Assembly: GCF_006345805.1 (NCBI RefSeq)
Contig: NC_043005.1
Coordinates: 53,692,001 to 53,756,000, forward strand
Direction of reading: 5' to 3'
DNA: 64,000 nt
DNA from: Octopus sinensis
Lineage: Eukaryota
The position numbers and the translations under genes were made by a program. The stretch's first letter is position 1; every line of letters begins with the position of its first letter. Below the pieces are notes generated by a model. The model did not search any database, was not told where the DNA came from, and was given only the letters and a program-made list of their open reading frames with translations. Shown in pieces: positions 2,757 through 59,816 of this stretch.

Positions 2757-3430
2757 TCTACTGGGAGCACAAGGACTCAAATTTGGGGGAAGGGATTAAG
2801 TTGATTTACATCGACCCCAGTAAGTAACTGGTACTAGATTTATTGACTCCGAAAGGATGAAAGGCAAAGTCGACCTCGGCGAAAAGGCAAAGGACAAACA
2901 AGGACAGACAAACGGATTAAGTTGATTATATCGACCCTAGTGCATAACTGGTACTTATTTAATCGACCCCGAAAGGATGAAAGGCAAAGTCGAACTCGAC
3001 GGAATATGAACTCAGAACATAACGGCAGATGAAATACCTGTTTCTTTATTACCCACAAGGGGCTAAACATAGAAGGGACAAGCAAGGACAGACAAAGGTA
3101 TAAGTCGATTACATCGACCTCAGTGCATAACTGGTATTTAATTTATCGACCCCGAAAGGATGAAAGGCAAAGTCGACCTCGGCGGAATTTGAACTCAGAA
3201 CATAATCGACTTAATCCGGTTGTCCTCTCTGTGTTTATCCCCTTGTGGGTAGTAAAGAAAAAGGTATTTCGTTTGTCTTTATGTTCCGAGTTCAAATTCC
3301 ACCGAGGTCAACTTTGCCTTTCATCTTTTTGGGGTCGATAAATTAAGTACCAGTTGTGTACTGGGGTCGATCTAATCAACTGGCCCCATTCTCAAAAATT
3401 CCAGGCCTTGTGCCTAGCTTAGAAAAGATA
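2757..3430. mobile_element. Cluster of concatenated and inverted Meta/MESC-like SINE pieces. Other copies lie at about 10805-11230(-), 11265-11480, 12282-12500, 18628-18835, 25844-26058, 30350-30568, 33770-33990, 36753-36990 and 53885-54095(-).
   Basis: GTCGACTTTGCCTTTCATCCTTTCGGGGTCGATAAATTAAGTACCAG recurs in both orientations. Confidence 0.85.
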
Positions 3431-6559: not shown

Positions 6560-7667
6560 ATCATCATCATCATCATCATCGTTTAACGTCCGCTTTCCAT
6601 GCTAGCATGGGTTGGACGGTTCAACTGGGGTCTGGCAAGCCCGAAGGCTGCACCAGGCCAGTCAGATCTGGCAGTGTTTCTACAGCTGGATGCCCTTCCT
6701 AACGCCAACCACTCCGAGAGTGTAGTGGGTGATTTTATGTGCCACCGACACAGGTGCCAGACGAGGCTGGCAGACGGCCACGCTCGGATGGTGTTTTTTA
6801 TGTGCCACCGACACAGGTGCCAGACGAGGCTGGCTGACGGCCACGCTCGGATGGTGTTTTCTTATGTGTCACCGACACAGGTGCCAGACGGGGCTGGCGG
6901 ACGGCCACGCTCGGATGGTGTTTGTTACGTGCCCTCAGCACGGAGGCCAGTCGTTGCGGTACTGGCTACGATCACGTTTGGATGGTTTTCTTATGTGCCA
7001 CCGGCACTGGTACCACAAGGATACAAATTCCATTGATGTTCATCTATTTTGATTTGATTCGATTCGATTCGATTCTCACTTGCCTCAACAGGTCTTCACA
7101 AGTGTCACAAGAAGGAAGGTATGCACAGGTGGACTGACTACGTCCCAGGTAGGGGCCATGGATTATGGCTTCACTAGTCTTGCCAGGTCTTCTCACGTAC
7201 AGCATACTTCCATAGGTCTCGGTCTCTAGTCATTTCCATGGTGAGACCTAACGTCCGAAGGTCGTGCTTCACCACTTCATCCCAGGTTTTCCTGGGTCTA
7301 CCTCTTCCACGGGTTCCCTCAACTGCTAGGGATTGGCACTTTCTCACACACCTATCTTCATCCATTCTCGCCACATGACCATACCAGCGCAATCGTCTCT
7401 CTTGCACACAACAACTGATACTTCTTAGGTACAACATTTCTCTCTGTCGAGTAAGTACACTGACATTACACATCCATCGGAGCATACTGGCTTCGTTCCT
7501 CACAAGCTTACGCATGTCCTCAGCAGTCACGGCCCATGTTTCACTGCCATGTAGCATAGCTGTTCGTACACATGCATCATACAGTCTGCCTTTTACTCTG
7601 AGCGAGAGGCCTTTAGTCACCAGCAGAGGTAAGAGCTCCCTAAACTTTGCCCAGGCTATTCTTATTC
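6560..7667 (-). mobile_element. 5'-truncated RTE LINE with a 3' UTR containing ~54-bp tandem units and a (GAT)n tail
   Basis: ORF 7174-7620 reads KGRLYDACVRTAMLHGSETW...RRLRWYGHVARM...GRGRPRKTW. The (ATC)n tail is at 6560-6580. UTR-only copies lie at 23793-24307, 44385-44703, 59115-59745 and 61620-61790. Confidence 0.88.
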
Positions 7668-9842: not shown

Positions 9843-12800
9843 CAATACAGTTATTAATAAGAAAAGTTGAAACTAATACATGTGAGATTTCACAGTTTTG
9901 TCATCAATCCTCCATAACCAGCCAATAAACTTTTCAGCCCGTCCTAGTGTATGTGTGTGTGTGTGTATTAAACGTATATTCATATTTCAATATGCCTCTA
10001 ATTTGTTTATATTCTTCAATTGTATTTCAGTGTCCATTGCTTACATTATGTTGAAACATGCACACACAGACACACACACACACACACAAATGTACACTTT
10101 GTACATACATATACATTCTTAAATCTATAGAAATAAATATATGTGTATACACATATATATGCATATATTATATATAAATATGCATGTGCATGTGTGTGTG
10201 TGTGTGCGTGTGTGTGTGTGTATAGTATGTATACATGTATGTACATGTGTGTATGTATAAAATAATGCCATGGAATATTCCATTGTCAGAATCTTAGGAA
10301 GCCATTCATTGACCTACATCTTACTAACCTACCTTCTTTTAATTATCATCAGAAACCTTCTAACATGGTTGAGATTCATGAAATTATGTTTAACGAGAAG
10401 CCTTTACCATGGTGTTAGAAAGATGATCACTGATTAATACATATATCTAAATTATATTGTACATGACAAACAAAAAAAAATGTAGATTAGGAAAGGTAGA
10501 TTATTCAAAGACCATGAATAAATTTTTGAGAAAATAATTTTTTTTTAAATGCAGCTTTTATCAAATTATTATATTTATGGTTAGAAGAAGCAACTATGGC
10601 ATTGGTTGTTAAAACTTTAAGTCTTTACTGGTTGCAAATTTTTAATCTGGAAGGATGTTGATTGTTATCATAATTATAAAATATAACAATACCAACATGT
10701 TAAGCATTAACAATTTAATTTTAGGCCATCAACCTGTTGCCATTGTGTATTTATGTGCATTTTGTTTGTTAACTCAATATCTAACTTGGTTAAGTCAGAA
10801 CTAGGATCAATATTCTTTTCTACTCTAGGCACAATGCCTAAAATTTTGGGAGAAGGGAGCCAGTCAATTATAGCGACCCCAGTATGATACTGGTACTTAA
10901 TTTATTGACCCCAAAAGATGAGAGGCAAAGTCAACCTCAGCAGAATTTGAACTCAGAACGTAAAGACAGACGAAATACCACTATGCATTTTGCCCAATGT
11001 GCTAACACTTCTTATTTCTTTATTGCCCACAAGGGGCTAAACATAGAGGAGACAAGACAAACAAGGACAGACATCGACCCCAGTGGGTAACCGGTACTTA
11101 ATTTATCTACGCTGAAAGGATGAAAGGCAAAGTCGACCTCGGCGGAATTTGAGCTCAGAATGTAATGCCAGATGAAATACTGCTAAGCATTTCACTCAGC
11201 ATGCTAACGTTTCCACCAGCTCTCCACCTTATAACTATGATCCCTATTGCCATAGATGTAAGGCAGTGAGCTGGCTGAATCATTAACATGTTGGGCAAAA
11301 TGCTTAGTCACATTTTGTTCATCTTTATATTCTGAGTTCAATTTCCACCAAGGTCGACTTTGCTTTTCATGCCTTCTAGGTCAATAAAATAAGTACCAGT
11401 TGAGCACTAGTGTTGATGTAATTGACCTATCCCTCCCCTAAAACTACTGGCCTTTTTTGCTCAAACTTGACAGCAATATTTCATAGATGTGCTCATCTCT
11501 TGCGGGCATGGATGTATGGTAAGAGGTTTGTTTCTCAACCACACCGTTCCAGGTTCAGTCCCACATTGTGGTACTTTGGGAAAGTGTCTCAGGCATGCTG
11601 ACTAAAGTGTTGTGAGTGGATTTGGTCGACAGAAACTGAAAGAAGCCTATGGTATACATACATGTGTGTGTGTGTGTGTATTTGTATTTGTCTCCAAACA
11701 CTGCTTAACAACCAAAGGATTGGTATGTCATGTGCCCATAACTTAATAATTCATCAAAAGAAACTGAAAGAATAAACATCAGGCTTCAAAAACATTCTTT
11801 GCATTGCGTGACAGTTGTAAACGAGCATCACCATTATACAAGTGGTATCTTTTGTTTCCAATCATGTATGAAAACATGCCTGGCTATGGGGAAATATTAT
11901 TTGCTTGGGAACAGATGATGGTTGGTGACAGGAAGAGTATGTGGCTACAGAAAATTCTGCTCCAACAAATTTGTCCAACTCATGCAAGCATGGAAAACTG
12001 ACATAAGAACAACTATGATGAAGTGATTTCTTCTAAAATGGTCTGAATTCTACAAAGTTTGCCAATCAATGTGACCACCACTCAGGAATACTCATCTCAC
12101 TCTTCGCTCCTCTTCTCATTGCCCATAATCTGTTCCCACAGCAAACACTTTGCCAAACTTTTCCTTTCCCCTTCCTACAACATTCAATGCTTCTGGAACT
12201 TTCCATGACATTTTTGCTGCTGGTATTTCGTAGTTGTTAAAGAAAACCATCAACTGTACTGATATTACTATTCTTGAATAAGGTGGTGAGCTGGCAAAAA
12301 CGTTACTGCATCAGGTACATTGCTTAGTGGCACTTTGTCTGTCTTCATATTCTGAGTTCAAATTCCCCTGAGGTCGATTTTGACTTCCATACTTTTGTGG
12401 TTGATAAAAATAAGAACCAGTTGAAATATGGGGTTGTTGTAATTGACTTACTCCCACTCCAAAATTTCTGGCTTTGTGTCAAAATTTGGAACCTATATTA
12501 CTGGTCTTGGAGAACTTGAAGATTGTCTTGGACACTACTCCTTCCTTCCAAATGATTAAAACAAATATTATTAGCTTCCAGTCTCTGACAGAGGTGAATT
12601 GGTACAGTGGTAGAATGGTTAGAGTGGTAGAGTTGTAAGAATTGTAAAGAGTGTATAGTGTATACTATGTATAGATACTACAAAGTACTTGCTTCAGTTC
12701 TCCCTTCTTTGAATTCAAATTGTGTTGAGGTCAACTTTACTGTTCTTCAACCTTTTGTAGTCAGGGAGGTAGAGTGGCAGAATACACATGTCTTTTGTTG

Positions 12801-13000
12801 GTAAAAGATCAATATTAACATTTCCTCTGAGATTATTGAAATCAAAAACTGCAAGAAAAATATGAGCAAGGAGATGCAGGCATGGATGTATGGTAAGAGT
12901 TTTGTTTCCAAACCACACCATGCCAGATTCAGTCCCACATTGTGGCGCTTTGGGCAAGTGTCTCAGGCAGGTTAACCAAAGTCTTATGAAACTAAAAGAA

Positions 13001-13108
13001 GTTACTAGCTACAGCAGTACATATTCTAAAATTGGAACAATACAGAGAAGATTAGCATGGCCCCTGTGCAAGGATGACAAGCAAATTTGTGAAGCGTTCC
13101 ATATTTCT
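13001..13108 (+). pseudogene. U6: Full-length U6 snRNA retrocopy
   Basis: From ACATAT to the 3' T-run there are 6 mismatches in about 90 nt against metazoan U6 as recalled, 4 of them at CpG. The ACAGAGA box is at 13042-13048. The upstream flank is SINE sequence rather than a U6 promoter. Confidence 0.93.
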
Positions 13109-13112
13109 AAAA

Positions 13113-13384
13113 GGCAGCGAGCTGGCAGAAACGTTAGCATGTCAGGCAAAATGCTTGGCGGAATTTAATCTGCCGCTACGTTCAGAGTTCAAATTCCTCC
13201 AAGGTCGACTTTGCTTTCATCCTTTCGGGGTTGATTAAATAAGTACCAGTTATGCACTGGTATAGATTAAGTCGATTATATCGAACTCAGTTATGCACTG
13301 GGGTCGATATAGTCGACTGAATCCGTTTATCTGTCCTTGTTTGTCCCCTCTGCGTGTGGCCTCTTGTGGGCAGTAAAGAAATAA
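13113..13384 (+). mobile_element. Full-length Meta/MESC-like SINE fused to the U6 3' end
   Basis: GGCAGCGAGCTGGCAGAAACGTTAGC head begins 4 nt after the U6 T-run and the element ends in the family tail GTAAAGAAATA. Confidence 0.85.
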
Positions 13385-14864
13385 GAAACTGCAAGAAGCC
13401 TATAGTATGTATACATATGTGTGTGTGTGCATGTATTTATGTTTGACCCCCATCAATACTTAACAACCAGTGTTGATAAGTTATGTACCCATAACTTAGT
13501 AATTCAGCAAAAGAAACTGAAAGGATAAACATCAGGCTTCAAAGCATAAACATAAGCACTGGGATTGATTTGTTCAAATAGAATTCCTCAAGGCAGTGCC
13601 CCAGCATGGCCACGGTCTAATGACTGAAACAAGTAAGAGATAAAAGATAAAAGGAATGGAGAACATACCAAAATTTCTAATATAAAACTATGGTAGAATT
13701 TTGTAATTTAAATATAAACCTTTTAAAAAATGAGGCAGTCTCGGATAAATTAATAACAAAAAAGTTAAAAATGCCAACATTTGCCAGTTTATATGAATGG
13801 ACATGTTCACAATTAGAAGCAATTTATGGAGCACATTGATCAAGAAGAAACAAGTTTTACATTTTCAAAGTTGACCTTTTGAATTTTTTTTTATTTGTAA
13901 ATGTAACTTAGTCCTATTTATTTTTGAACAGACAGCACAATTTCATTGAAAAATAAGTAAGGAAGAAAGTGCAATTGTAAATATTTATAGCTTCTTTAAC
14001 AATTACAAAGTGAAAAAAGAACATTTATATTTGATATTAAAATTGAAATAATAGTAGAAATAACAAAATAAACGAATAACTTTGTTGTTCTTTAAAAAAA
14101 AAACAGAAGATTTTACATAAATTCTGCCTAACGTCGTAGTTAAATATAGTTGAAACATTTCCTACCTTATGTACAAAATATTGGCTGTTCTTTGTGAAGC
14201 TGAATTAAGCAATATATATATAACAATAGTTTGAAATACTTATGTGTCTTTAAAGGTTGAATTGCTGAAAGCAATAAATCAAATATCTATTCTCAATGGT
14301 ATTGATTTCTAATCAAATTTTTTTTTTCTAAGATTTTAATCTTGATCTTTTTTTGTTGAATTTACTTTTTAAATTTGACATTTATTCTATTTAACGTACT
14401 CATGTTTTGATGTTTTTTTTTCTTTCAATTTTTTTTTATTTATTATACTTTAAAAAAAAGTATTTTACCTTTTTTCTGTTATCCTCATCAAAGATATCAA
14501 ATTTAAACAATTATACCCAATTTAAAATCGCCCTTTAGTGAAGATGCTGCTATATTTTTCTCAGTGAATGAACAAAGTTTGTCCTCAAGTTTAATATGTC
14601 TGAATGTCATTAATTTAAAATTTATAACCTAAACAAATGAACCATGGTATAAAAGTTATTGCTTAAGACATAACAAAATACTTTTGCTTTAAATAAAACG
14701 TTTCATAAAAAAAAATTATTTGAAAGTATATAAATCGTGTCAAAATTGGAATTTTGAAATGACTAAAGATTTAAGTGAGATTAAAGATATCTGGAATTTA
14801 TAAAGCAAATACTAAAAGAATGAAAATAATACACACATCATGTAGTGATATTAGATACATGTAT

Positions 14865-26476: not shown

Positions 26477-27690
26477 CAGGGTGTGGCGAATAACTTGTCT
26501 AAATTGCACAATATTGAAAATAACACTGATATCTCATTTTAATAGATACATGTACCAAAATTACATAAAAGTATCTTCAAATACAAAAGAGTTAATTTAT
26601 TCAACAAAATCGCCATTGTCTTCAATCATGACCTCCAGACAACTTTGGAATCTCCTGTGACTCTTCTGGGATGGTCTCCTTATTTAAGTTGGTGAATGCT
26701 GCCATAATCCTTGTCTTATGTTTATCTTTGGTGTTACAAGGAGTTTTGTTAGTCTTTCGCTCAACTGTGCCCCACACAGAATAATCAAAGGGCTTGCAGT
26801 CTGGAGAGTTAGGTGGCCAGATGTTAGGAGCGATGTGGTCACAGAAATTGTCTGACAGGTATGAATGGTTTCTCCTGCTTTTGTTGCATGGAGCAGGGTC
26901 CTGTTGCCAGACATAGAGTCTTCCAGCAGGTACCCTCTTGACCCAGGGCAGCACTACCTCTTCCAAGCACTTGATGTAGACCACCGTGTTGAGTTTGAGG
27001 CCGTGTGGGAAGATGACTGGAAGCATAATGTCACCAACACTAGTGATCACTCCAAACACCTTGATGTTGAGTGGATGTTTGATTTTTATCACTCTCAGTA
27101 TATGTTTTGAGTGCACAGCAAGCCAACAGTTTGTTCTGTGTGTTCCCCATCTGATACTGGCAAAAAGTTTTCTCATCTAAAACAACCAAAGCATGTTCAG
27201 TTAGAAGGGATGCTTGAGTTTGTCCCAAAACTTCATAGCATGATCTTTCCTGTTGTCCTTGATGGCTTGGGATAAAAATTGGCCCTTTCTCATCTTGTAT
27301 GAAGAATACTGAATGCCTTCATGCACCACCTGCTTGATAAGAAACTGAGACACACCCATGTCCCAAGCAATAATCTGATTGACTTGGAGGGATCATTGTC
27401 AATCATGGCCTGAATCTCACCAACAAATTCGGGAGTTATTTTCTTATCAGAATGATCAGAGTGAGTTTTCCAAGCTGCAATACCTTCATAATCACCATTA
27501 GACTCATGCAACTCATTTCAAATCCTCTGCAGTCCTCAGATTGACACCCAAACACTCATAAATGTTTGTATTGGAGCTTCCAGCATGAATGCCAAGCACT
27601 ACAGCATGTCATTTCTAAATTTCTGACAGAGGGAATTGCATCATGGTGCTGTTTTTCTAACACACGGTGCCCAGCTGACCCTACTATACT
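26477..27690 (-). mobile_element. maT-type (DD37D) Tc1/mariner transposon relic with a frameshifted transposase
   Basis: WQQD-x37-D spacing in WQQDPAPC...WPPNSPDCKPFDY (ORF 26622-27176), with N-terminal fragments in 27290-27511. The left end is TA|CAGGGTGTGG and the right TIR is not recognisable. Confidence 0.8.
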
Positions 27691-28279
27691 GTATAGTTAA
27701 CAAAATCAAAAACACACAATGCACATGCTCAAGATCAAAATATAAAATGGCGAGAATTTACCAATCACAGGCTGTCTGTGTGTGTGTATACACATGTATG
27801 TAAATGGGTATACATACATACATTTATATATATACACACACCACACACAAAGACACACAAACACACATAAATGCACACACATAAGTACCAATGTTTGTGT
27901 GTCAATGTATTTGGAAATATTTACAGACAAATCTCACATTCTGTGATTTAAATTTGAAATTTTATATCCAAAATTCTGAAGCACTTTGATGTAGTGAATC
28001 AAACCCTAAAGAATTTTGGCTCGAAATCCAAGACATATTCATTTTGTTTACAACAAAGGCCTCACATTTTGATTTACAGCAGACAAGTACATATAAATAT
28101 AATTATCTCCAACTAATATTCTTTTTGTGATAATATCGATAGTGTGGGTTTGGTAGGTTATTCATTTGCTTGATTTTTACATCCATTTTTCCATGTCAGC
28201 ATGGGTTATATGAATATAGCATTGGGGCATTGATCGGAGGAGGTAGGTATGTTGATAAGTAACTACGTAGGTAGGCAGT

Positions 28280-28320
28280 CATGTGGATAGACAGACAGAC
28301 AGACAGACAGACAGGCAGAC

Positions 28321-28407
<87 letters not shown>

Positions 28408-29259
28408 TGGAGGGACAGAACAACAGACAAACAGTACAAAACGATATATAGAAAGATAAAAAGAGAGAGAGAGATGGATAGAAAGATTAATACATGTACT
28501 GACAGACTGATGGAGAGACAAGTAGGCAGAGAGACAACTAGACAGACAGACAAAACAAGCAGACTGACAGACAAACAGATAGATAGATAGATAAATAGAT
28601 AGATATGAATAACTGGATAGAGATAGAGAGAAAGAGAGAGAAAGAGAACGAGAGGGAGGGATGGATGGATGGATAGCTCGATAAATAGAGAGATAGATAG
28701 ACGCACAGACACTCAGATAGCCAGACAGACAGGAAGACAGATAGATAGAGAGATAGATAGACACACACAGACAACCGAACAGATGCAAACCCTAAGAGAG
28801 ACAGACACACAGACAGACCAAGTAGACAGACAGGCAGACGGACAGGCAGAGAGATAGACAGACAGACTGACAGAAACCTAGACAGCCATAAAAATAGACA
28901 AAGAAATAGACAAAAAGAAATAAACTGATACATGGCCAAATAGATATATAAATAGGTTATATAAAAAACTGACTAGACAATTATGCATGTGTGTGAGTGT
29001 GTGCATTTGTGTGTGCATTTGTGTGTGCATGTGTGTGTGTATGTATTACTAGATATAAATGGATAGATAGACAGATAAACAGACAGACGAAAACAGACTC
29101 AAGTGGAGTTAACTTACTGTATGTAGTGAGCCAAATGGATGAATGGATGTAGACACACAAATGAACTATTAGTATATAGACAGAGACAGACAGACAGACA
29201 GACCAATCGATTGGTCGATAGATGGATAGATAGAAAGATAAATTGGTAGACAGACAGAC

Positions 29260-29302
<43 letters not shown>

Positions 29303-29426
29303 TTGCTAAATTGATATATATATATATATACATAGTACAGACAGACAGACAGATAGAAAGATAGATAGACAGACAGACAGACAGACAGGTAGATGCATAG
29401 ATGGACATGCAGAGAGACAGATAGAT

Positions 29427-29464
<38 letters not shown>

Positions 29465-29642
29465 AAGATAGAGATTGCTAAATTGATAGATACATAAACA
29501 GACAGGCAGACAGATATATATATATATATAGTACAGACAGACACAGATAGAAAGATAGAGAGAGACAGAGAGACAGAGAGACAGACAGAAAGATAGATGC
29601 ATAGACGGACACACAGAGAGATAGATAGATAGATAGATAGAT

Positions 29643-29683
<41 letters not shown>

Positions 29684-29830
29684 CAGATAGATAGATCGAT
29701 AGATAGATAGATAGATAGAAAGAAAGAAAGACAGAGTCAAGCATAAACACACACATAGACAAACAGACAAAAAGACAGGCAGACAAATACATAGATAAAT
29801 ATATCGATAGATAGATAGATAGACAGAAAT
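28280..29830. repeat. Complex GATA/GACA/GAGA block with internal higher-order duplications
   Basis: Purine-rich plus strand with a repeated GAGATTGCTAAATTGATA landmark at about 29300 and 29470. Confidence 0.9.
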
Positions 29831-30800
29831 AAATTAGCCGTCAATAACAGTATATAATGTATTGATCTGGAATAGTATCTCTTGGCAGGAATTTCAATAT
29901 TGTGTCCTCCTTCATAAATAACCCCAACTCTACAATTCAGTTTATTTTTATAGCAAAATGGCTGAAGACTATTGATCATTATTAATGATTTTAAATATTG
30001 ACAGAGTGCTTTTAACAAACCTCTCAATGTAAAATACTAATTTTTACATCAAATTGAAGAAGAAAACAGTCATGTTTGTTTTATATTTTTTTCCTTGGGC
30101 ATATTTTTGTTTGTTTGGTTTTGCTTTTTTTTATTTTTATCCACTTGCTAATACTATCGCAGATTGTGATATGATATAGATCCCAAATAATTGGTTCTCC
30201 ATTGAAAGATTTGTATAAGCAGGAATATATTTGTAGGTGGAGAATAGTTCTGTAAATGTATATAGTTGGAGACTGAGAAGTTTATAGTGTGTCCGTAGAT
30301 TAAGAGTTCTATGGTTCACATATGATCACCAATATTTTTAGTATTATTCAAGTGGCGAGCTGGCTGAAATGTTAGCACACCGGGTGAAATGCTTGGCGGT
30401 ATTTCATCTGTTTTTAAGTTTTGAGTTCAAATTCTGCCAAGGTTGACTTTGCCTTTCATCCTTTCAGGGTCGACAAATTAAGTACCATTTCAATATTGGG
30501 GTCAATCTAATCGACTGCTCCCTGTCCCCCAAAATTGTGGGCCTTGTGCCTAGAGTAGAAAATAATATTTGTTTTGTTAGGAATCATGAGCTTAACTCTC
30601 AAGTTCTTTTACTTGTTTCAGTTACTTAACTTTGGCCATATGGGAGACCACCTTGAAGGGTTTTAGGCGAACAAGTCAACCCCAGAGTTTATTTCTTAAG
30701 CCAAGTACTTATTTTACCGGTCTCTTTTGAGGTGATGGAGGAACAAACACAGACACAAAGACACACACACATAAATATGTACATATATATATATATATAT

Positions 30801-51475: not shown

Positions 51476-53129
51476 AGATGATAACAGGAATATATTCATT
51501 GACTACAGACACTCTCCTTGAAAACTTGCCTCTATTATATTTAGTCAAAAGAAATCAATTTGTATAAGAGAACTTTATAATTTTAGTGCACTGTTATTTC
51601 TCTCATTATGAATTTTCTGAAGTAATTTTTCATACACCACTTCAGTTAACTTCAGATATGATTCAGTCAGCAACAACTTAGGACATAACTAACAATCTAA
51701 TAGCAAAAACCTCCATGTAATGCACTTTGAACAGAAGCAATGGATATAAATTCATCTGAAAATTATTTACTATATAATCAAAATTGAACAGGACTATACG
51801 AAACAGAGATGAATTTAAATCTAAATTTATAATTGATATCATATTAGAGTTACAGTGTGTAACACGCATAAGCCCATTAAAAGCAAAACGGGAGTGTGGT
51901 AGATAATAATGTTAATGGTGCTTACAAACGACATTTTGTCCAATGAATGTTAAGTGATTAAATATATACATAAATAAATAAATTGAATGTTTATTTTTGC
52001 TAAAATTCTATGTTATTGTAGATGCTGGTGACATTGATTTAACTATGGCATATGATATGGAGGGGATGTGAGAAATTATTATTGAATGTAAGAAATATTA
52101 TGCAATAAGTGCAGGCATGCCTGTGTGGCAAGGAGATTGCATCCCGACCACATGGTCCCGGGTTCAGTCCCACTGCATGGAACATTGGGCATGTGTCTTC
52201 TACTATCGCCTTGGGCCAACCAAAGCCTTGTGAGTGGATGTGGTTGACGAAACCTGAAAGAAGTCCATCTTACACACACACACACACACACGCATATATA
52301 TAAGTTAATTAGGGGATATATTAATCTCATAAAGGGACGATTACATCCAAGAAAGCACTGGTTTTATACCTTATATCTTTAGGAAACAAAATTTCCCTAA
52401 ATCAATAGGTATGTATTAAGCATATAATCCGTATTGGATTAAGGAAATGGAGAGTTACTTGTTGATAATTATTTATTAAATAATTATTAACCACTAACTT
52501 TCCATTTCCTTCTCTTAATTTAAATATGGATTATGTGTGTGTATGTGTGTGTGTGAGTGTGTGTGTGTAAGTATGTATGTATGTATTATTTATGTGTGCA
52601 TGTCTGTGTTATTCGGCCCCTCCCCCCACCATCGCTTGACAACCAATGTTTGTGTGTTTATGTCTTAGTAACTTAGTAGAATTAAAGAATAATAAAATGA
52701 ACACCACTGTGGCTCCACTGTGGATCCTTGCAACTTCCACCCACTGTCATGCCATCATAGTGCTGGCTGCCTTCCATGCCATACCACACTTAACAAGATC
52801 ATAAAGCAAAGCCTAGATACTGCAGGCTTCTCTTCCCAGCTTAAGCCAGTGGAGCTAGACTGAGGGGATGGTAAAAGGCCAGACTGTAGGACAATTTCCC
52901 TGTTCCCTGGCAAAAGGCCACACAACCTCCATCTGAGATGCCACATGCTGTGAGATCTTCTCTAGTGGCAACTTAGTGTTGTCAGTTACCAGCTCACTCT
53001 CCAATGCTCATCAGGCTGAGAAAAGCAAGCCGTCAAGATATTAGTCACCCTCTGACTAATAGCCCACTACAGCTACATGGGATGGTGTACATGCAGTTTT
53101 TGGTCATATTCTTTTCTGTTTTACCCAAA

Positions 53130-53481
53130 GGGGAATATGACCAAAACTGCATGTACTCCATCCCATGCAGCTGTGGTGGGCAATACAAAGGCAAAACATT
53201 GCCACCCACTCAAAATAAGGGTAGAGGAACATCGCAAAGCTGTGACACAAGGAGATATTGATAAATTGGGTATATATGATCATGTATGGAAAAATGGAGA
53301 CCACTTCCCCCTGTGGGATGAAGTTAAAATAATAGAGGGAGAACACCACTGGAAAATACGAAAACTAAAAGAAGCAGCACATATGCTAGGACACAACAAC
53401 CTCCTAAGCAGAATGAGTGCAGATATGAGCAGCATATGGGAACCGGTATTAAGGAAGGATAGAAGAATATTAGATTTATAA
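53130..53481 (+). mobile_element. Penelope-like element C-terminal GIY-YIG endonuclease fragment (frameshifted)
   Basis: NCMYSIPCSCGGQYKGKT / HPLKIRVEEHRKAV...IYDHVW...HFPLWDEVKII..EHHWKIRKLKEAAHM..NNLLSR. This gives GIY/YIG-like strands, CxC and His residues, and the conserved Arg, Glu and Asn. Confidence 0.85.
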
Positions 53482-57390: not shown

Positions 57391-57860
57391 GTTGATGAGC
57401 TGGAAAAATCGTTAGCATGCTGGGCAAAATGCTTAGCAGTATTTGGCTGCCGTTACATTCAGAGTTCAAATTCCACTAAGGTCGACTTTGCCTTTCATCC
57501 TTTCAGGGTCGATTAAATAAGTATCTATTTCTGTACTACCCACAAGGGGCTAAACACAGAGAAGACAAACAAGGACAGACAAAGTCGATTATATCGACCC
57601 CAGTGTTTCACTGGTACTTAATTTATCGACCCCAAAAGGATGAAAAGCAAAGTCGACCTTGGTGGAATTTGAACTCACAACGTAGCGGCAGATGAAATAC
57701 CGCTAAGCATTTTGCCCCGTGTGCTAACGATTCTGCCAGCTCGCTGCCTTAAATAAGTACCAGTTACACACTGGGGTTGATGTAATCGACTTAATCCCTT
57801 TGTCAGTCCTTGTTGTCCCCTCTATGTTTAGCCCCCTGTGGACAATAATGAAATAAATAT
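57391..57860. mobile_element. Meta/MESC-like SINE nested antisense inside a copy of itself
   Basis: 11-bp TSD TTAAATAAGTA at 57513-57523 and 57749-57759. Confidence 0.85.
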
Positions 57861-59114
57861 ACTAAGAGTAGCTTCTAACTTGATGTAGGTTCAAATTCTC
57901 ACAAAATCAATACAATTTGCATTGTTATTCTAGTTTCTATTTAACCCCAGGTCAGAAATACTTGAGCAGGTCTGTAATCAAAGTCATTTCTAGCAATGAT
58001 CACTTGATCTTTTTCCTTGGATTTTTGCTTCACTAAAATAATAGGTTGAAGAAAAGCTTTGCTGCTATGACACTGGGGAACTCATGAACATCACAATATC
58101 CTGTTCATTCCCAAAGTTTATTGAAAGTTCATGCCTAAACGAAAGAAATCAATATATTTCTCCAATAAACGAAGATCCAATATTTTTTCATTGTCTTGAC
58201 CATATAAGGAAATTTGAATTTTTTTTATGACTTATGACTAACATTTCCTATTATGAAAACAAAGAAAATAATGAATGTCTTGAAAAAGTACTTAGTAATT
58301 GAAAACGAATATGTCAGTTGTAAGTGTGCATTTTTTGATTAAATTGTATATGCAAATACTTAATTATATGTATTTAGGACCAAACAGAGGAAATTATATA
58401 ATAATATAACAAAAATATCAATTTTTTTTCAGACAATATCAATTTTTTTTGTCTGAAAAATTAATACTGTCTACACCAAAGAATATTGAATTTGATTTTC
58501 AATAATTGAATTTATTAAATACTAAATGAAAAGTAGAATATATTAATAATTTTGTTTTCTTTTTTTTTAAAAAAAAACTGTATTTAACTTTATTATTATT
58601 TTTGTCTGTTGCTAGGTTTTCATTGTTATAAATTTACATTAGTTTGATGTGAAATAGTGAAATAGTTCACTTGTTTTTTTAATGTTTTTAATTTAATAGC
58701 TTTAACTGTTTTGACATTTGTGAATGTCTTGATTTAGTTTTTTTTACAAATAAAACATCTTGTAAAAATAAGAACAATATTTTTTTTTTATAAAAAACAA
58801 TATTTGCATTTGCAGATCATATTCACACAAATTCACCTTTATCGTTCATAATAAACAAAGTGCATCTCTCTCTCTCTCTACAAAACAATAAGAGAGCTTC
58901 TGTATATATAATTACTCAACCTGCTAGAAATAGCAGCTAAATCTTCTTCAATTTGCAATCTACTATCCTAAGAAGAAAAAGAAAACATTGGCTAGTGTAG
59001 ACCTATATTTACAAACAGATCAGTTAATTATAATTTGAACTTAAACATGTATTATAATTTGAACTTAAACATGTATCTGAAATTAAACAAGAACAACACT
59101 CATATATATATATA

Positions 59115-59816
59115 TCATCATCATCATCATCATCATTTAGCGTCCGTTTTCCATGCTAGCATGGGTTGGACGGTTCAACTGGGGTCTGGGGAGCCCGAAG
59201 GCTGCACCAGGCCAGTCAGATCTGGCAGTGTTTCTACAGCTGGATGCCCTTCCTAACGCCAACCACTCCGAGAGTGTAGTGGGTGATTTTATGTGCCACC
59301 GACACAGGTGCCAGACGAGGCTGGCGAACGGCCACGCTCGGATGGTGTTTTTATGTGCCACCGACACAGGTGCCAGACGAGGCTGGCAGACGGCCACGCT
59401 CGGATGGTGTTTTTATGTGCCACCGACACAGGTGCCAGATGAGGCTGGCAGGTGCCAGACGAGGCTGGCAGACGGCCACGCTCGGATGGTGTTTTTATGT
59501 GCCACCGACACAGGTGCCAGATGAGGCTGGCGGACGGCCACGATCGGATGGTGTTTGTTACGTCCCCAAAGCACGGAGGCCAGTCTATGCGGTACTGGCT
59601 ACGGCCACGTTCGGATGATTTTCTTGTGTGCCACCGGCACTGGTACCACAAAGATACAAATTCCATTTATGCTCATCTATTTTGATTTGTTTTGATTTGA
59701 TTTGATTTTCACTTGCCTCAACAGGTCTTCACAAGTGTCACTTGCCTCAACAGTGACACTTGTGAAGACCTGTTGAGGCAAGTGAAAATCAAATCAAATC
59801 AAAACAAATCAAAATA
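59115..59816 (-). mobile_element. RTE 3' UTR fragment with expanded ~54-bp units, ending in a perfect 65-bp-arm palindrome
   Basis: Near-identical to 6560-7110. 59678-59742 is the exact reverse complement of 59752-59816. Confidence 0.88.

What the first reader, a model, noticed from the sequence alone, without database searches (positions are those of the whole stretch)
12988..13398. U6 snRNA-SINE chimeric retrocopy bracketed by one target-site duplication
Seen: full-length U6 (13001-13108), a 4-A linker and a full-length tRNA-headed SINE (13113-13384), all inside a host CORE-like SINE. The host motif GAAACTGAAAGAAG appears on both sides, as GAAACTAAAAGAAG (12988-13001) and GAAACTGCAAGAAG (13385-13398). 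Each differs from the host consensus by one base, and the SINE has no separate TSD. Established: U6/L1 chimeras in mammals form by template switching or by RtcB ligation of the U6 cyclic-phosphate end. Inference: one insertion event joined two Pol III RNAs here, in an invertebrate and with a SINE partner. I do not know of this being described. An intact SINE 5' end favours template switching over ligation.
Basis: partly seen in the sequence, partly recalled or inferred. Interest (0 to 1): 0.75.

Follow-up and report, generated by a model that had tools for sequence, protein, structure and literature searches.

The report
U6-SINE chimeric retrocopy in octopus DNA
A dead copy of the spliceosomal U6 RNA is fused head-to-tail to a full-length octopus SINE and was almost certainly pasted into an older SINE in one retrotransposition event; this kind of chimera is already known in vertebrates, so this is a clean invertebrate example and not a new mechanism.

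Summary
Rfam finds one complete U6 (13002-13108, 100.9 bits). A full-length copy of an abundant SINE follows it (13111-13384). Both sit inside an older SINE. Five other host copies in the window carry GAAACTGAAAGAAG once; here it occurs on both sides (12988-13001 and 13385-13398, 12/14 identical). A repeat this good, abutting both ends at this spacing, occurs at 0.11% of random window positions. Neither part has its own duplication.

Two corrections. All 12 SINE copies examined start AAGG, so the "4-A linker" is really two extra A (13109-13110). The SINE also carries a private 41-bp rearrangement.

The U6 is a decayed pseudogene with no promoter and a broken terminator (TTTCT). The window is octopod DNA: the same SINE family occurs in Octopus vulgaris.

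Best reading: one target-primed reverse transcription event started on the SINE tail, ran to the SINE's 5' end and jumped to U6.

The novelty claim fails. Doucet et al. 2015 report U6 chimeras with SINEs (platypus Mon-1, AnolisSINE2, human Alu) and with L2 and RTE LINEs. My limited searches found no invertebrate case. I could reach no orthologous locus and no whole octopus genome. Verdict: new member of a known kind, modest interest.

The parts
12872..12987 (+). Left arm of the older host SINE (head plus CORE-like region). It lacks 17-18 bp (GTGGATTTGGTCGACAG) directly 5' of the duplication, relative to all other host copies.
   Evidence: Alignment with 5 other host copies in the window. BLAST hits include 86% identity to 11501-11615.
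12988..13001 (+). Left copy of the target-site duplication, GAAACTAAAAGAAG. It is one base from the host consensus GAAACTGAAAGAAG. G13001 may also be the first base of U6.
13001..13108 (+). Full-length U6 snRNA retrocopy (pseudogene). It ends TTTCT instead of a T run. It has no upstream promoter, because host SINE sequence lies directly upstream. 6 of 63 highly conserved model positions are changed.
   Evidence: Rfam RF00026, 100.9 bits, model positions 1-105. Mismatch counts.
13109..13110 (+). Two extra A at the U6/SINE junction. They belong to neither consensus.
   Evidence: The SINE 5' end is AAGG: all 12 copies have AA before GG, and duplications fix the start at AAGG in two copies. U6 ends at 13108.
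13111..13384 (+). Full-length copy of an abundant octopod SINE. 5' end AAGGCAGCGAGCTGG; 3' end GTAAAGAAATAA against the consensus ...AAATAG(G). About 13% from a six-copy consensus.
   Evidence: The same family occurs in O. vulgaris locus L001.
13261..13301 (+). Private 41-bp insertion inside the SINE. It consists of 27 bp that include an inverted copy (19/22) of the downstream segment, plus a second copy of CAGTTATGCACTGG (14/14 identical to 13247-13260).
   Evidence: Pairwise alignment to the consensus and reverse-complement comparison. Absent from all other copies.
13385..13398 (+). Right copy of the target-site duplication, GAAACTGCAAGAAG. It is one base from the host consensus and continues into host sequence CCTATAG...
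13399..13654 (+). Right arm of the host SINE (internal TG/TA microsatellite and 3' domain).
   Evidence: Alignment with other host copies.

Best explanation
This is a dead-on-arrival chimeric retrocopy made in a single target-primed reverse transcription (TPRT) event.

Inferred sequence of steps:
1. The still unidentified partner LINE of this octopod SINE nicked an older CORE-like SINE at ...GACA|GAAACTG...
2. It primed cDNA synthesis on the 3' tail of a SINE transcript and copied it to its 5' end (AAGG...).
3. Two A (sense strand) entered at the junction. They come from non-templated addition, from an adenylated U6 3' end, or from a SINE RNA that started two bases upstream.
4. The enzyme continued on the 3' end of a U6 snRNA and copied it to its 5' end.
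5. Second-strand synthesis produced the 14-bp duplication.

Shown: the anatomy, the duplication, the completeness of both RNAs and the lack of separate duplications.
Inferred: that it was one event, that it happened by template switching, and which enzyme did it.

The copy has no function. The U6 part has no promoter and a broken terminator, and it has decayed mostly at CpG sites. The SINE's internal promoter would start transcription downstream of U6, so the chimera cannot propagate as such.
For: - Complete U6 model match.
- SINE complete at both ends against the family consensus.
- The host motif is single in 5 intact host copies and doubled here. Chance of an abutting repeat of at least 12/14: 0.11%.
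- No SINE-only or correctly placed U6-only duplication.
- The duplication length equals that of other copies of the same SINE: 15, 14, 13 and 9 bp. This points to the SINE's own machinery.
- Comparable decay of U6, the duplication and the SINE.
- Precedent: U6 chimeras with SINE and with L2/RTE partners in vertebrates, attributed to template switching (PMC4476161).
- RtcB ligation requires a 5'-OH partner (PMC6789731). A primary Pol III transcript with an intact 5' end would not have one.
Against: - No orthologous or empty site in another species could be examined, so one event versus two rests on parsimony.
- The two extra A are compatible with several origins.
- The SINE's apparent divergence (about 13%) is somewhat higher than that of U6 (about 7-10%). 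The six-copy consensus is noisy, and source-copy differences inflate the figure.
- A 17-18-bp host deletion abuts the left copy of the duplication. Simple TPRT does not predict this.
- Moldovan et al. argue that mammalian U6/L1 chimeras arise mainly by ligation, not by template switching.
Confidence: 0.6

Rival explanations
1. RNA ligation before retrotransposition. A U6 RNA with a 2',3'-cyclic phosphate end was joined by RtcB to a SINE-containing RNA with a 5'-OH. The fused RNA was then retrotransposed through the SINE tail.
For: This mechanism has been demonstrated for human U6/L1 (PMC6789731). The U6 3' end is complete, as expected for mature U6. The two extra A could mean that the partner RNA began 2 nt upstream of the SINE's normal start, that is, a cleaved longer transcript.
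Against: The partner starts within 2 nt of the SINE's native 5' end. That would be a coincidence for a random endonucleolytic 5'-OH end. Primary Pol III transcripts carry a 5'-triphosphate, which strongly reduces RtcB ligation.
Confidence: 0.15
2. Two independent insertions. Either the SINE entered the host first, making the 14-bp duplication, and a U6 retrocopy later landed exactly at its 5' boundary. Or U6 with a short A tail entered first, and the SINE later inserted between the tail and the 3' copy of the duplication.
For: Doucet et al. note that some apparent snRNA/Alu pairs may be two events. A 3-nt AAG repeat can be drawn around U6 (AAG|U6...A|AAG-G), and a 7-mer CTAAAAG occurs near both U6 ends. 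A-rich tails are favoured targets in L1 systems.
Against: It needs a second insertion within 0-2 nt of an element boundary and with no proper duplication, whereas this SINE normally makes 9-15-bp duplications. The CTAAAAG match is mis-positioned. It lies 3 nt from the U6 5' end and overlaps U6 and SINE bases. It also depends on a derived base in the left copy.
Confidence: 0.12
3. Read-through from a master locus. Somewhere in the genome, a promoter-bearing U6 gene copy with a defective terminator (TTTCT) lies directly upstream of a SINE. Pol III read through into the SINE, and the co-transcript was retrotransposed through the SINE tail (a 5' transduction).
For: It explains the exact U6 5' end, the interrupted T run and the short AA spacer without any template jump.
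Against: It requires a rare pre-existing arrangement. The T-to-C change is equally explained by decay after insertion at about 7% divergence. No second U6 and no second U6-SINE junction was found in the 64-kb window, in 20 kb of O. vulgaris or in the metagenome scan. These samples are tiny.
Confidence: 0.08
4. Assembly or sequencing chimera, or a recombination product between repeats, rather than a true insertion.
For: The region is saturated with repeats.
Against: The junctions are exact RNA ends. The flanks form a proper duplication within one continuous host element. All parts show independent mutational decay. Misassembly would not give this.
Confidence: 0.03

Closest known systems
U6/SINE chimeric retropseudogenes of vertebrates: U6/Mon-1 in platypus, U6/AnolisSINE2 in Anolis, U6/Alu and U6atac/Alu in human (Group IV snRNA pseudogenes, Doucet et al. 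2015, PMC4476161)
   Same: U6 lies 5' of a SINE in the same orientation, joined at the U6 3' end. One duplication flanks the whole (14 bp in the U6atac/Alu example). The partners are mobilised by non-L1, stringent LINEs. An extra A at the junction is also noted there.
   Different: The host is a mollusc, whereas the survey covered vertebrates only. Here U6 is full length, whereas platypus U6/L2 chimeras are mostly 5'-truncated with duplications of 1-9 bp. The partner LINE here is unidentified.
Mammalian U6/L1 chimeras (Buzdin 2002; Garcia-Perez 2007; Moldovan 2019, PMC6789731)
   Same: A full-length U6 with a complete 3' end is fused in sense orientation to a retroelement 3' part and flanked by one duplication. 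The U6 reading-frame query from this locus retrieved mammalian ORFs of U6 fused to LINE-like sequence (my reading of the sequences).
   Different: The partner there is a variably 5'-truncated L1 with a poly(A) tail. Here it is a full-length, tail-specific SINE without poly(A). RtcB ligation fits a truncated partner with a 5'-OH end better than it fits an intact SINE 5' end.
Small-RNA-headed composite SINEs born from chimeras: SINEU (U1/U2 heads, Kojima 2015, PMC4494074) and hagfish SINE1-1_EBu (7SL + tRNA-SINE, PMC7245038)
   Same: A small nuclear or cytoplasmic RNA is added to the 5' end of an existing SINE, probably by template switching.
   Different: Those are amplifying families with many copies and shared junctions. 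Here there is a single decayed copy, and none of the other SINE copies examined has U6 upstream. Metazoan U6 uses an external promoter, so a U6 head would not be transcribed.
Bipartite and tripartite chimeric retrogenes of Magnaporthe grisea (Gogvadze et al. 2007, PMC2104539)
   Same: Non-mammalian chimeras of a cellular RNA with a SINE or LINE, explained by one or two template jumps during LINE reverse transcription.
   Different: Fungal host. The 5' partner there is not U6.

Membership tests
U6 chimeric retropseudogene (snRNA pseudogene Group IV, Doucet et al. 2015) | A recognisable U6 sequence whose 3' end is joined, in sense orientation, to a retrotransposon sequence | tested here: met
   Rfam U6 at 13002-13108, all model positions matched. 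The SINE follows on the same strand after 2 nt.
U6 chimeric retropseudogene (snRNA pseudogene Group IV, Doucet et al. 2015) | One target-site duplication flanks the whole composite | tested here: met
   14-bp repeat, 12/14 identical. The motif is single in 5 intact host copies. Chance 0.11%.
U6 chimeric retropseudogene (snRNA pseudogene Group IV, Doucet et al. 2015) | No separate duplication around either component | tested here: met
   SINE-only best match is a 5-mer. U6-only best match is a mis-positioned 7-mer.
U6 chimeric retropseudogene (snRNA pseudogene Group IV, Doucet et al. 2015) | The 3' partner ends in the authentic 3' terminus of the retroelement, where reverse transcription starts | tested here: met
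   The locus ends GTAAAGAAATAA(G) against the family consensus GTAAAGAAATAG(G), directly abutting the duplication.
U6 chimeric retropseudogene (snRNA pseudogene Group IV, Doucet et al. 2015) | A single insertion event: orthologous sites are either empty or carry the full composite | not testable with these tools
   No orthologous octopus locus was reachable. Exact-ORF look-ups found nothing. The homologue search returned only mammalian U6 ORFs.
Functional U6 snRNA gene | An upstream external promoter, a T-run terminator of at least 4 T, and intact conserved positions | tested here: not met
   Host SINE sequence and the duplication lie directly upstream. The terminator reads TTTCT. 6 of 63 highly conserved model positions are changed and the 5' stem has mismatches.
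snRNA-headed SINE family (SINEU-like) | Multiple copies share the same head-body junction | tested here: inconclusive
   There is only one U6 in 64 kb, and none of the other SINE copies examined has U6 upstream. None was found in 20 kb of O. vulgaris. No junction match in JGI metagenome contigs. A whole-genome scan was not possible.
tRNA-derived SINE (the inserted SINE) | A 5' head recognisably derived from a tRNA, with A and B boxes | tested here: inconclusive
   ARAGORN and the Rfam tRNA model give no hit. A B-box-like GAGTTCAAATTCC is visible in the sequence. The literature describes octopus SINEs as tRNA-derived (Ohshima & Okada 1994, cited in PMC4758252).
CORE-SINE (the host element) | The conserved central CORE domain | not tested
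   The only basis is a resemblance of CCTTGGGCAAGTGTCTT...GCCTC to the MIR/CORE hallmark, recalled from memory. The literature lists an octopus SINE (OR1 or OR2, depending on the paper) as a CORE-SINE.

The most novel reading that the evidence does not exclude
This may be the first documented U6-retroelement chimera outside vertebrates. It would show that capture of U6 during target-primed reverse transcription extends to lophotrochozoan LINE/SINE machinery. The private inverted 27-bp segment with its 14-bp direct repeat inside the SINE might record further template jumps in the same event, making it a multi-jump cDNA.
Probability: 0.45. Interest if true: 0.4.

Novelty: new member of a known kind. 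Interest (0 to 1): 0.3.

Why it matters
If it is a single event, the locus extends U6 capture by retrotransposon reverse transcriptases from vertebrates to molluscs. U6 capture has been used as a marker of LINE activity and as a model for how new SINE heads arise. The extension would support the view that it is a general property of non-LTR retrotransposition, or of U6 RNA biology.

A partner with an intact 5' end is also a useful data point in the debate between template switching and RtcB ligation. One decayed copy carries little weight on its own. The value would come from a genome-wide catalogue in cephalopods, whose genomes are very rich in SINEs.

Tried and rejected
1. Exact look-ups of three window ORFs, to reach other assemblies or orthologous loci: the 92-aa ORF that spans host/U6/SINE, a retrotransposon ORF and a transposase-like ORF. 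None is on record.
2. A protein-space search with the ORF that reads through U6. It gave five hits, all mammalian U6 or U6/LINE-type ORFs, and none from a cephalopod.
3. A junction pattern (U6 3' end, 1-16 nt, SINE head) against JGI metagenome contigs: no match.
4. A full-text search for the SINE and host sequence strings in papers: none found.
5. A test of whether the closely related host copy at 11.5 kb is part of a segmental duplication that could serve as a true empty allele. Only the repeat itself matches, not the flanks, so it is a paralogous copy of the same subfamily.
6. U6-only duplication CTAAAAG and SINE-only duplication: rejected on position and length.
7. Identification of the partner LINE from the window. 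The SINE's 3' domain matches only other SINE copies. The retrotransposon fragment at 6570-7620 ends in a different tail, (GAT)n.
8. Pfam on four transposon-like ORF fragments: no informative hit.
9. tRNA detection in the SINE heads: no hit.

Full report
**What is there**

Rfam finds exactly one family above threshold in the 64-kb window. It is U6 spliceosomal RNA at 13002-13108 on the + strand: 100.9 bits against a gathering score of 44, E = 4.9e-25, all model positions 1-105 matched, not truncated (repeated locally). G13001 can serve as the first U6 base.

A SINE follows directly downstream. BLAST of 13113-13384 against the window gives 34 hits. An alignment of 15 copies shows that the locus copy is complete at both ends. 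It aligns over 234 positions with a consensus of the six closest copies, at 13% mismatch, apart from one 41-bp insertion.

The flanks (12872-12987 and 13399-13654) are two halves of another SINE-like repeat. That repeat has at least five further copies in the window.

**The duplication**

In the intact host copies the sequence runs ...GTGAGTGGATTTGGTAGACGGAAACTGAAAGAAGCC(T/C).... The motif GAAACTGAAAGAAG occurs once in each.

At the locus the motif occurs twice:
- GAAACTAAAAGAAG at 12988-13001, continuous with upstream host sequence.
- GAAACTGCAAGAAG at 13385-13398, continuous with downstream host sequence (CCTATAGTATG...).

I sampled random positions of this repeat-rich window at the same spacing. 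A repeat of at least 12/14 abutting both boundaries occurs at 0.11% of them.

A scan for other direct repeats found nothing for the SINE alone beyond a 5-mer. For U6 alone it found only the 7-mer CTAAAAG (12992-12998 and 13107-13113). This 7-mer is mis-placed for a target-site duplication. It ends 3 nt before U6 starts, it overlaps the last two U6 bases and the first SINE G, and it includes the derived A of the left copy.

The bracketing duplication is therefore real, and it is the only one.

1. All 12 SINE copies examined (11 in the window, one in Octopus vulgaris) read AAGG at their start.
   - Duplications place the boundary before AAGG in two copies: CATAGATGT|AAGG and GTATATATATATAC|AAGG.
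   - In two others the boundary is ambiguous through 1-2 nt of shared A.
   - The '4-A linker' is therefore two SINE bases plus two extra A (13109-13110).
2. The duplications of the other copies are 15, 14, 13 and 9 bp. The 14-bp duplication here is what this SINE's own machinery makes.
3. The SINE carries a private 41-bp insertion (13261-13301).
   - It holds a second, identical copy of CAGTTATGCACTGG.
   - It also holds 27 bp that include an inverted copy (19/22) of the segment just downstream.
4. The host's left arm lacks 17-18 bp (GTGGATTTGGTCGACAG) that all other host copies have. The deletion ends within 0-2 nt of the left copy of the duplication. I cannot explain this coincidence. It may be an unrelated deletion between GA microhomologies.
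5. Neither ARAGORN nor the Rfam tRNA model recognises the 'tRNA head'. Only a B-box-like GAGTTCAAATTCC is visible.

**State of the U6**

It is a pseudogene. Host sequence lies directly upstream, so there is no promoter. The T run reads TTTCT.
- 6 of 63 highly conserved model positions are changed.
- 6 of 90 positions 3' of the first stem-loop differ from the animal U6 sequence as I remember it.
- Three of those six are CpG-type transitions.

This 7-10% decay is similar to that of the duplication (each copy 1/14 from consensus). It is not far from the SINE's 13% or less, a figure inflated by a noisy consensus. All are less decayed than the host relative to most of its family (about 70-72% pairwise identity), although one same-subfamily host copy at 11.5 kb reaches 84-86%. 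The ages fit one event inside an older element, but they do not prove it.

**Organism**

A retrotransposon ORF fragment at 7177-7620 (-) has an Octopus vulgaris protein as its best named relative (79% identity over half the query). The 20-kb O. vulgaris locus around that gene (OX597824.1) contains the same SINE family at 88-91% identity to window copies. It also contains the host family. The window is octopod DNA, so 'invertebrate' is right.

The literature lists octopus SINEs as tRNA-derived, and lists an octopus SINE (OR1 or OR2, depending on the paper) as a CORE-SINE (PMC4758252 and PMC4824008). I did not test that label.

**Mechanism**

The simplest reading is one target-primed reverse transcription event.
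1. The SINE's partner LINE nicked the host at ...GACA|GAAACTG.
2. It primed on the SINE tail and copied the SINE RNA to its 5' end.
3. It continued on the 3' end of U6 and copied that RNA to its 5' end.
4. Second-strand synthesis gave the 14-bp duplication.

The two extra A could be non-templated additions, an adenylated U6 end, or a SINE RNA that started two bases upstream. Nothing here separates these.

Ligation of U6 (cyclic-phosphate end) to a 5'-OH RNA by RtcB is the demonstrated route for human U6/L1. It is strongly reduced by a 5'-triphosphate (PMC6789731). Ligation is not excluded.

Two independent insertions would need a second hit within 0-2 nt of an element boundary and without a duplication. 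Read-through from a U6 gene with a defective terminator into an adjacent SINE is a further possibility. It would explain TTTCT, but it needs a rare master locus.

My weights:

| Explanation | Weight |
|---|---|
| Single event by template switch | 0.6 |
| Ligation before retrotransposition | 0.15 |
| Two independent insertions | 0.12 |
| Read-through from a master locus | 0.08 |
| Assembly or recombination artefact | 0.03 |

**Comparison with what is known**

It has. Doucet et al. 2015 (PMC4476161) report the following:
- U6 chimeras with Mon-1 in platypus.
- Six U6 chimeras with AnolisSINE2 in the lizard.
- A U6atac/Alu chimera with a 14-base duplication, with earlier reports of U6/Alu cited.
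- U6 chimeras with L2 and RTE LINEs, plus one incompletely characterised CR1-like case in turkey.

They conclude that template switching to U6 is a general property of non-LTR retrotransposons. Their survey stopped at amphibians.

Related cases:
- snRNA or 7SL sequences added to the 5' ends of SINEs, giving new families (SINEU, PMC4494074; hagfish SINE1, PMC7245038).
- Chimeras involving a SINE in a fungus (PMC2104539).

My searches found no invertebrate U6 chimera. The library is incomplete, so this is weak evidence of absence.

The locus meets every testable defining feature of a Group IV U6 chimeric pseudogene. It fails the tests for a functional U6 gene. There is no sign that it belongs to an amplifying U6-headed family: one U6 in 64 kb, and none of the other SINE copies has U6 upstream.

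**What could not be done**

No octopus genome could be scanned, and no orthologous locus was reached.
- Exact-ORF look-ups failed.
- A search with the ORF that reads through U6 returned only mammalian U6 or U6/LINE ORFs.
- A junction pattern found nothing in metagenome contigs.

The claim of a single event therefore rests on anatomy and parsimony.

**Verdict**

The single-event interpretation is well supported but not proven. The novelty claim is overstated. This is a new, taxonomically distant member of a known kind. Interest 0.3.

Noticed in passing
window 13247-13301: Inside the SINE there is a private 41-bp insertion. It consists of a second identical copy of CAGTTATGCACTGG plus 27 bp that include an inverted copy (19/22) of the segment just downstream. 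It might record extra template jumps in the same event, a feature of the source copy, or a later replication error.
   Followed up: partly
window 12985-12989: The host's left arm lacks 17-18 bp (GTGGATTTGGTCGACAG) present in all five other host copies. The deletion ends within 0-2 nt of the left copy of the duplication. Simple TPRT does not explain this coincidence.
   Followed up: partly
window 11495-11790: A 3'-truncated host-family copy of the same subfamily (84-86% identity to the locus host, against about 70-72% for other copies) lies 1.4 kb upstream. Its insertion site is intact, so it is a paralogous 'empty site'. The flanks are not duplicated, so it is not an allele or a segmental duplicate.
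   Followed up: yes
L001 16587-17921 (Octopus vulgaris OX597824.1); window 2891-3206: One full SINE copy is followed by six head-to-tail 184-bp units derived from SINE positions about 48-271, that is, a SINE-derived tandem array. The window segment 2891-3206 matches that unit at 88-90%.
   Followed up: partly
window 6570-7637 (-) and 59087-59741: A retrotransposon 3' part: an ORF fragment, then 3.2 copies of a 63-bp tandem repeat (6733-6933), then a (GAT)n tail. A second partial copy lies at 59 kb. An ENA metagenome contig (L002, ERZ22665968) is 94% identical, so that 'metagenome' contains octopod DNA.
   Followed up: partly
window 57397-57856: A cluster of nested and inverted SINE copies. One copy inserted into another with the duplication (G)GTACTTATTTAA.
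   Followed up: partly
window 28000-30000: About 2 kb of strongly strand-asymmetric simple repeat (GC skew 0.31, AT skew 0.36). On the minus strand it reads as long runs of 'YLSI' codons.
   Followed up: no
window 26622-27176 (-) and 53077-53481 (+): Two ORF fragments (184 and 134 aa) that look transposon-derived by eye (transposase-like and endonuclease-like). Pfam gave no hit.
   Followed up: partly
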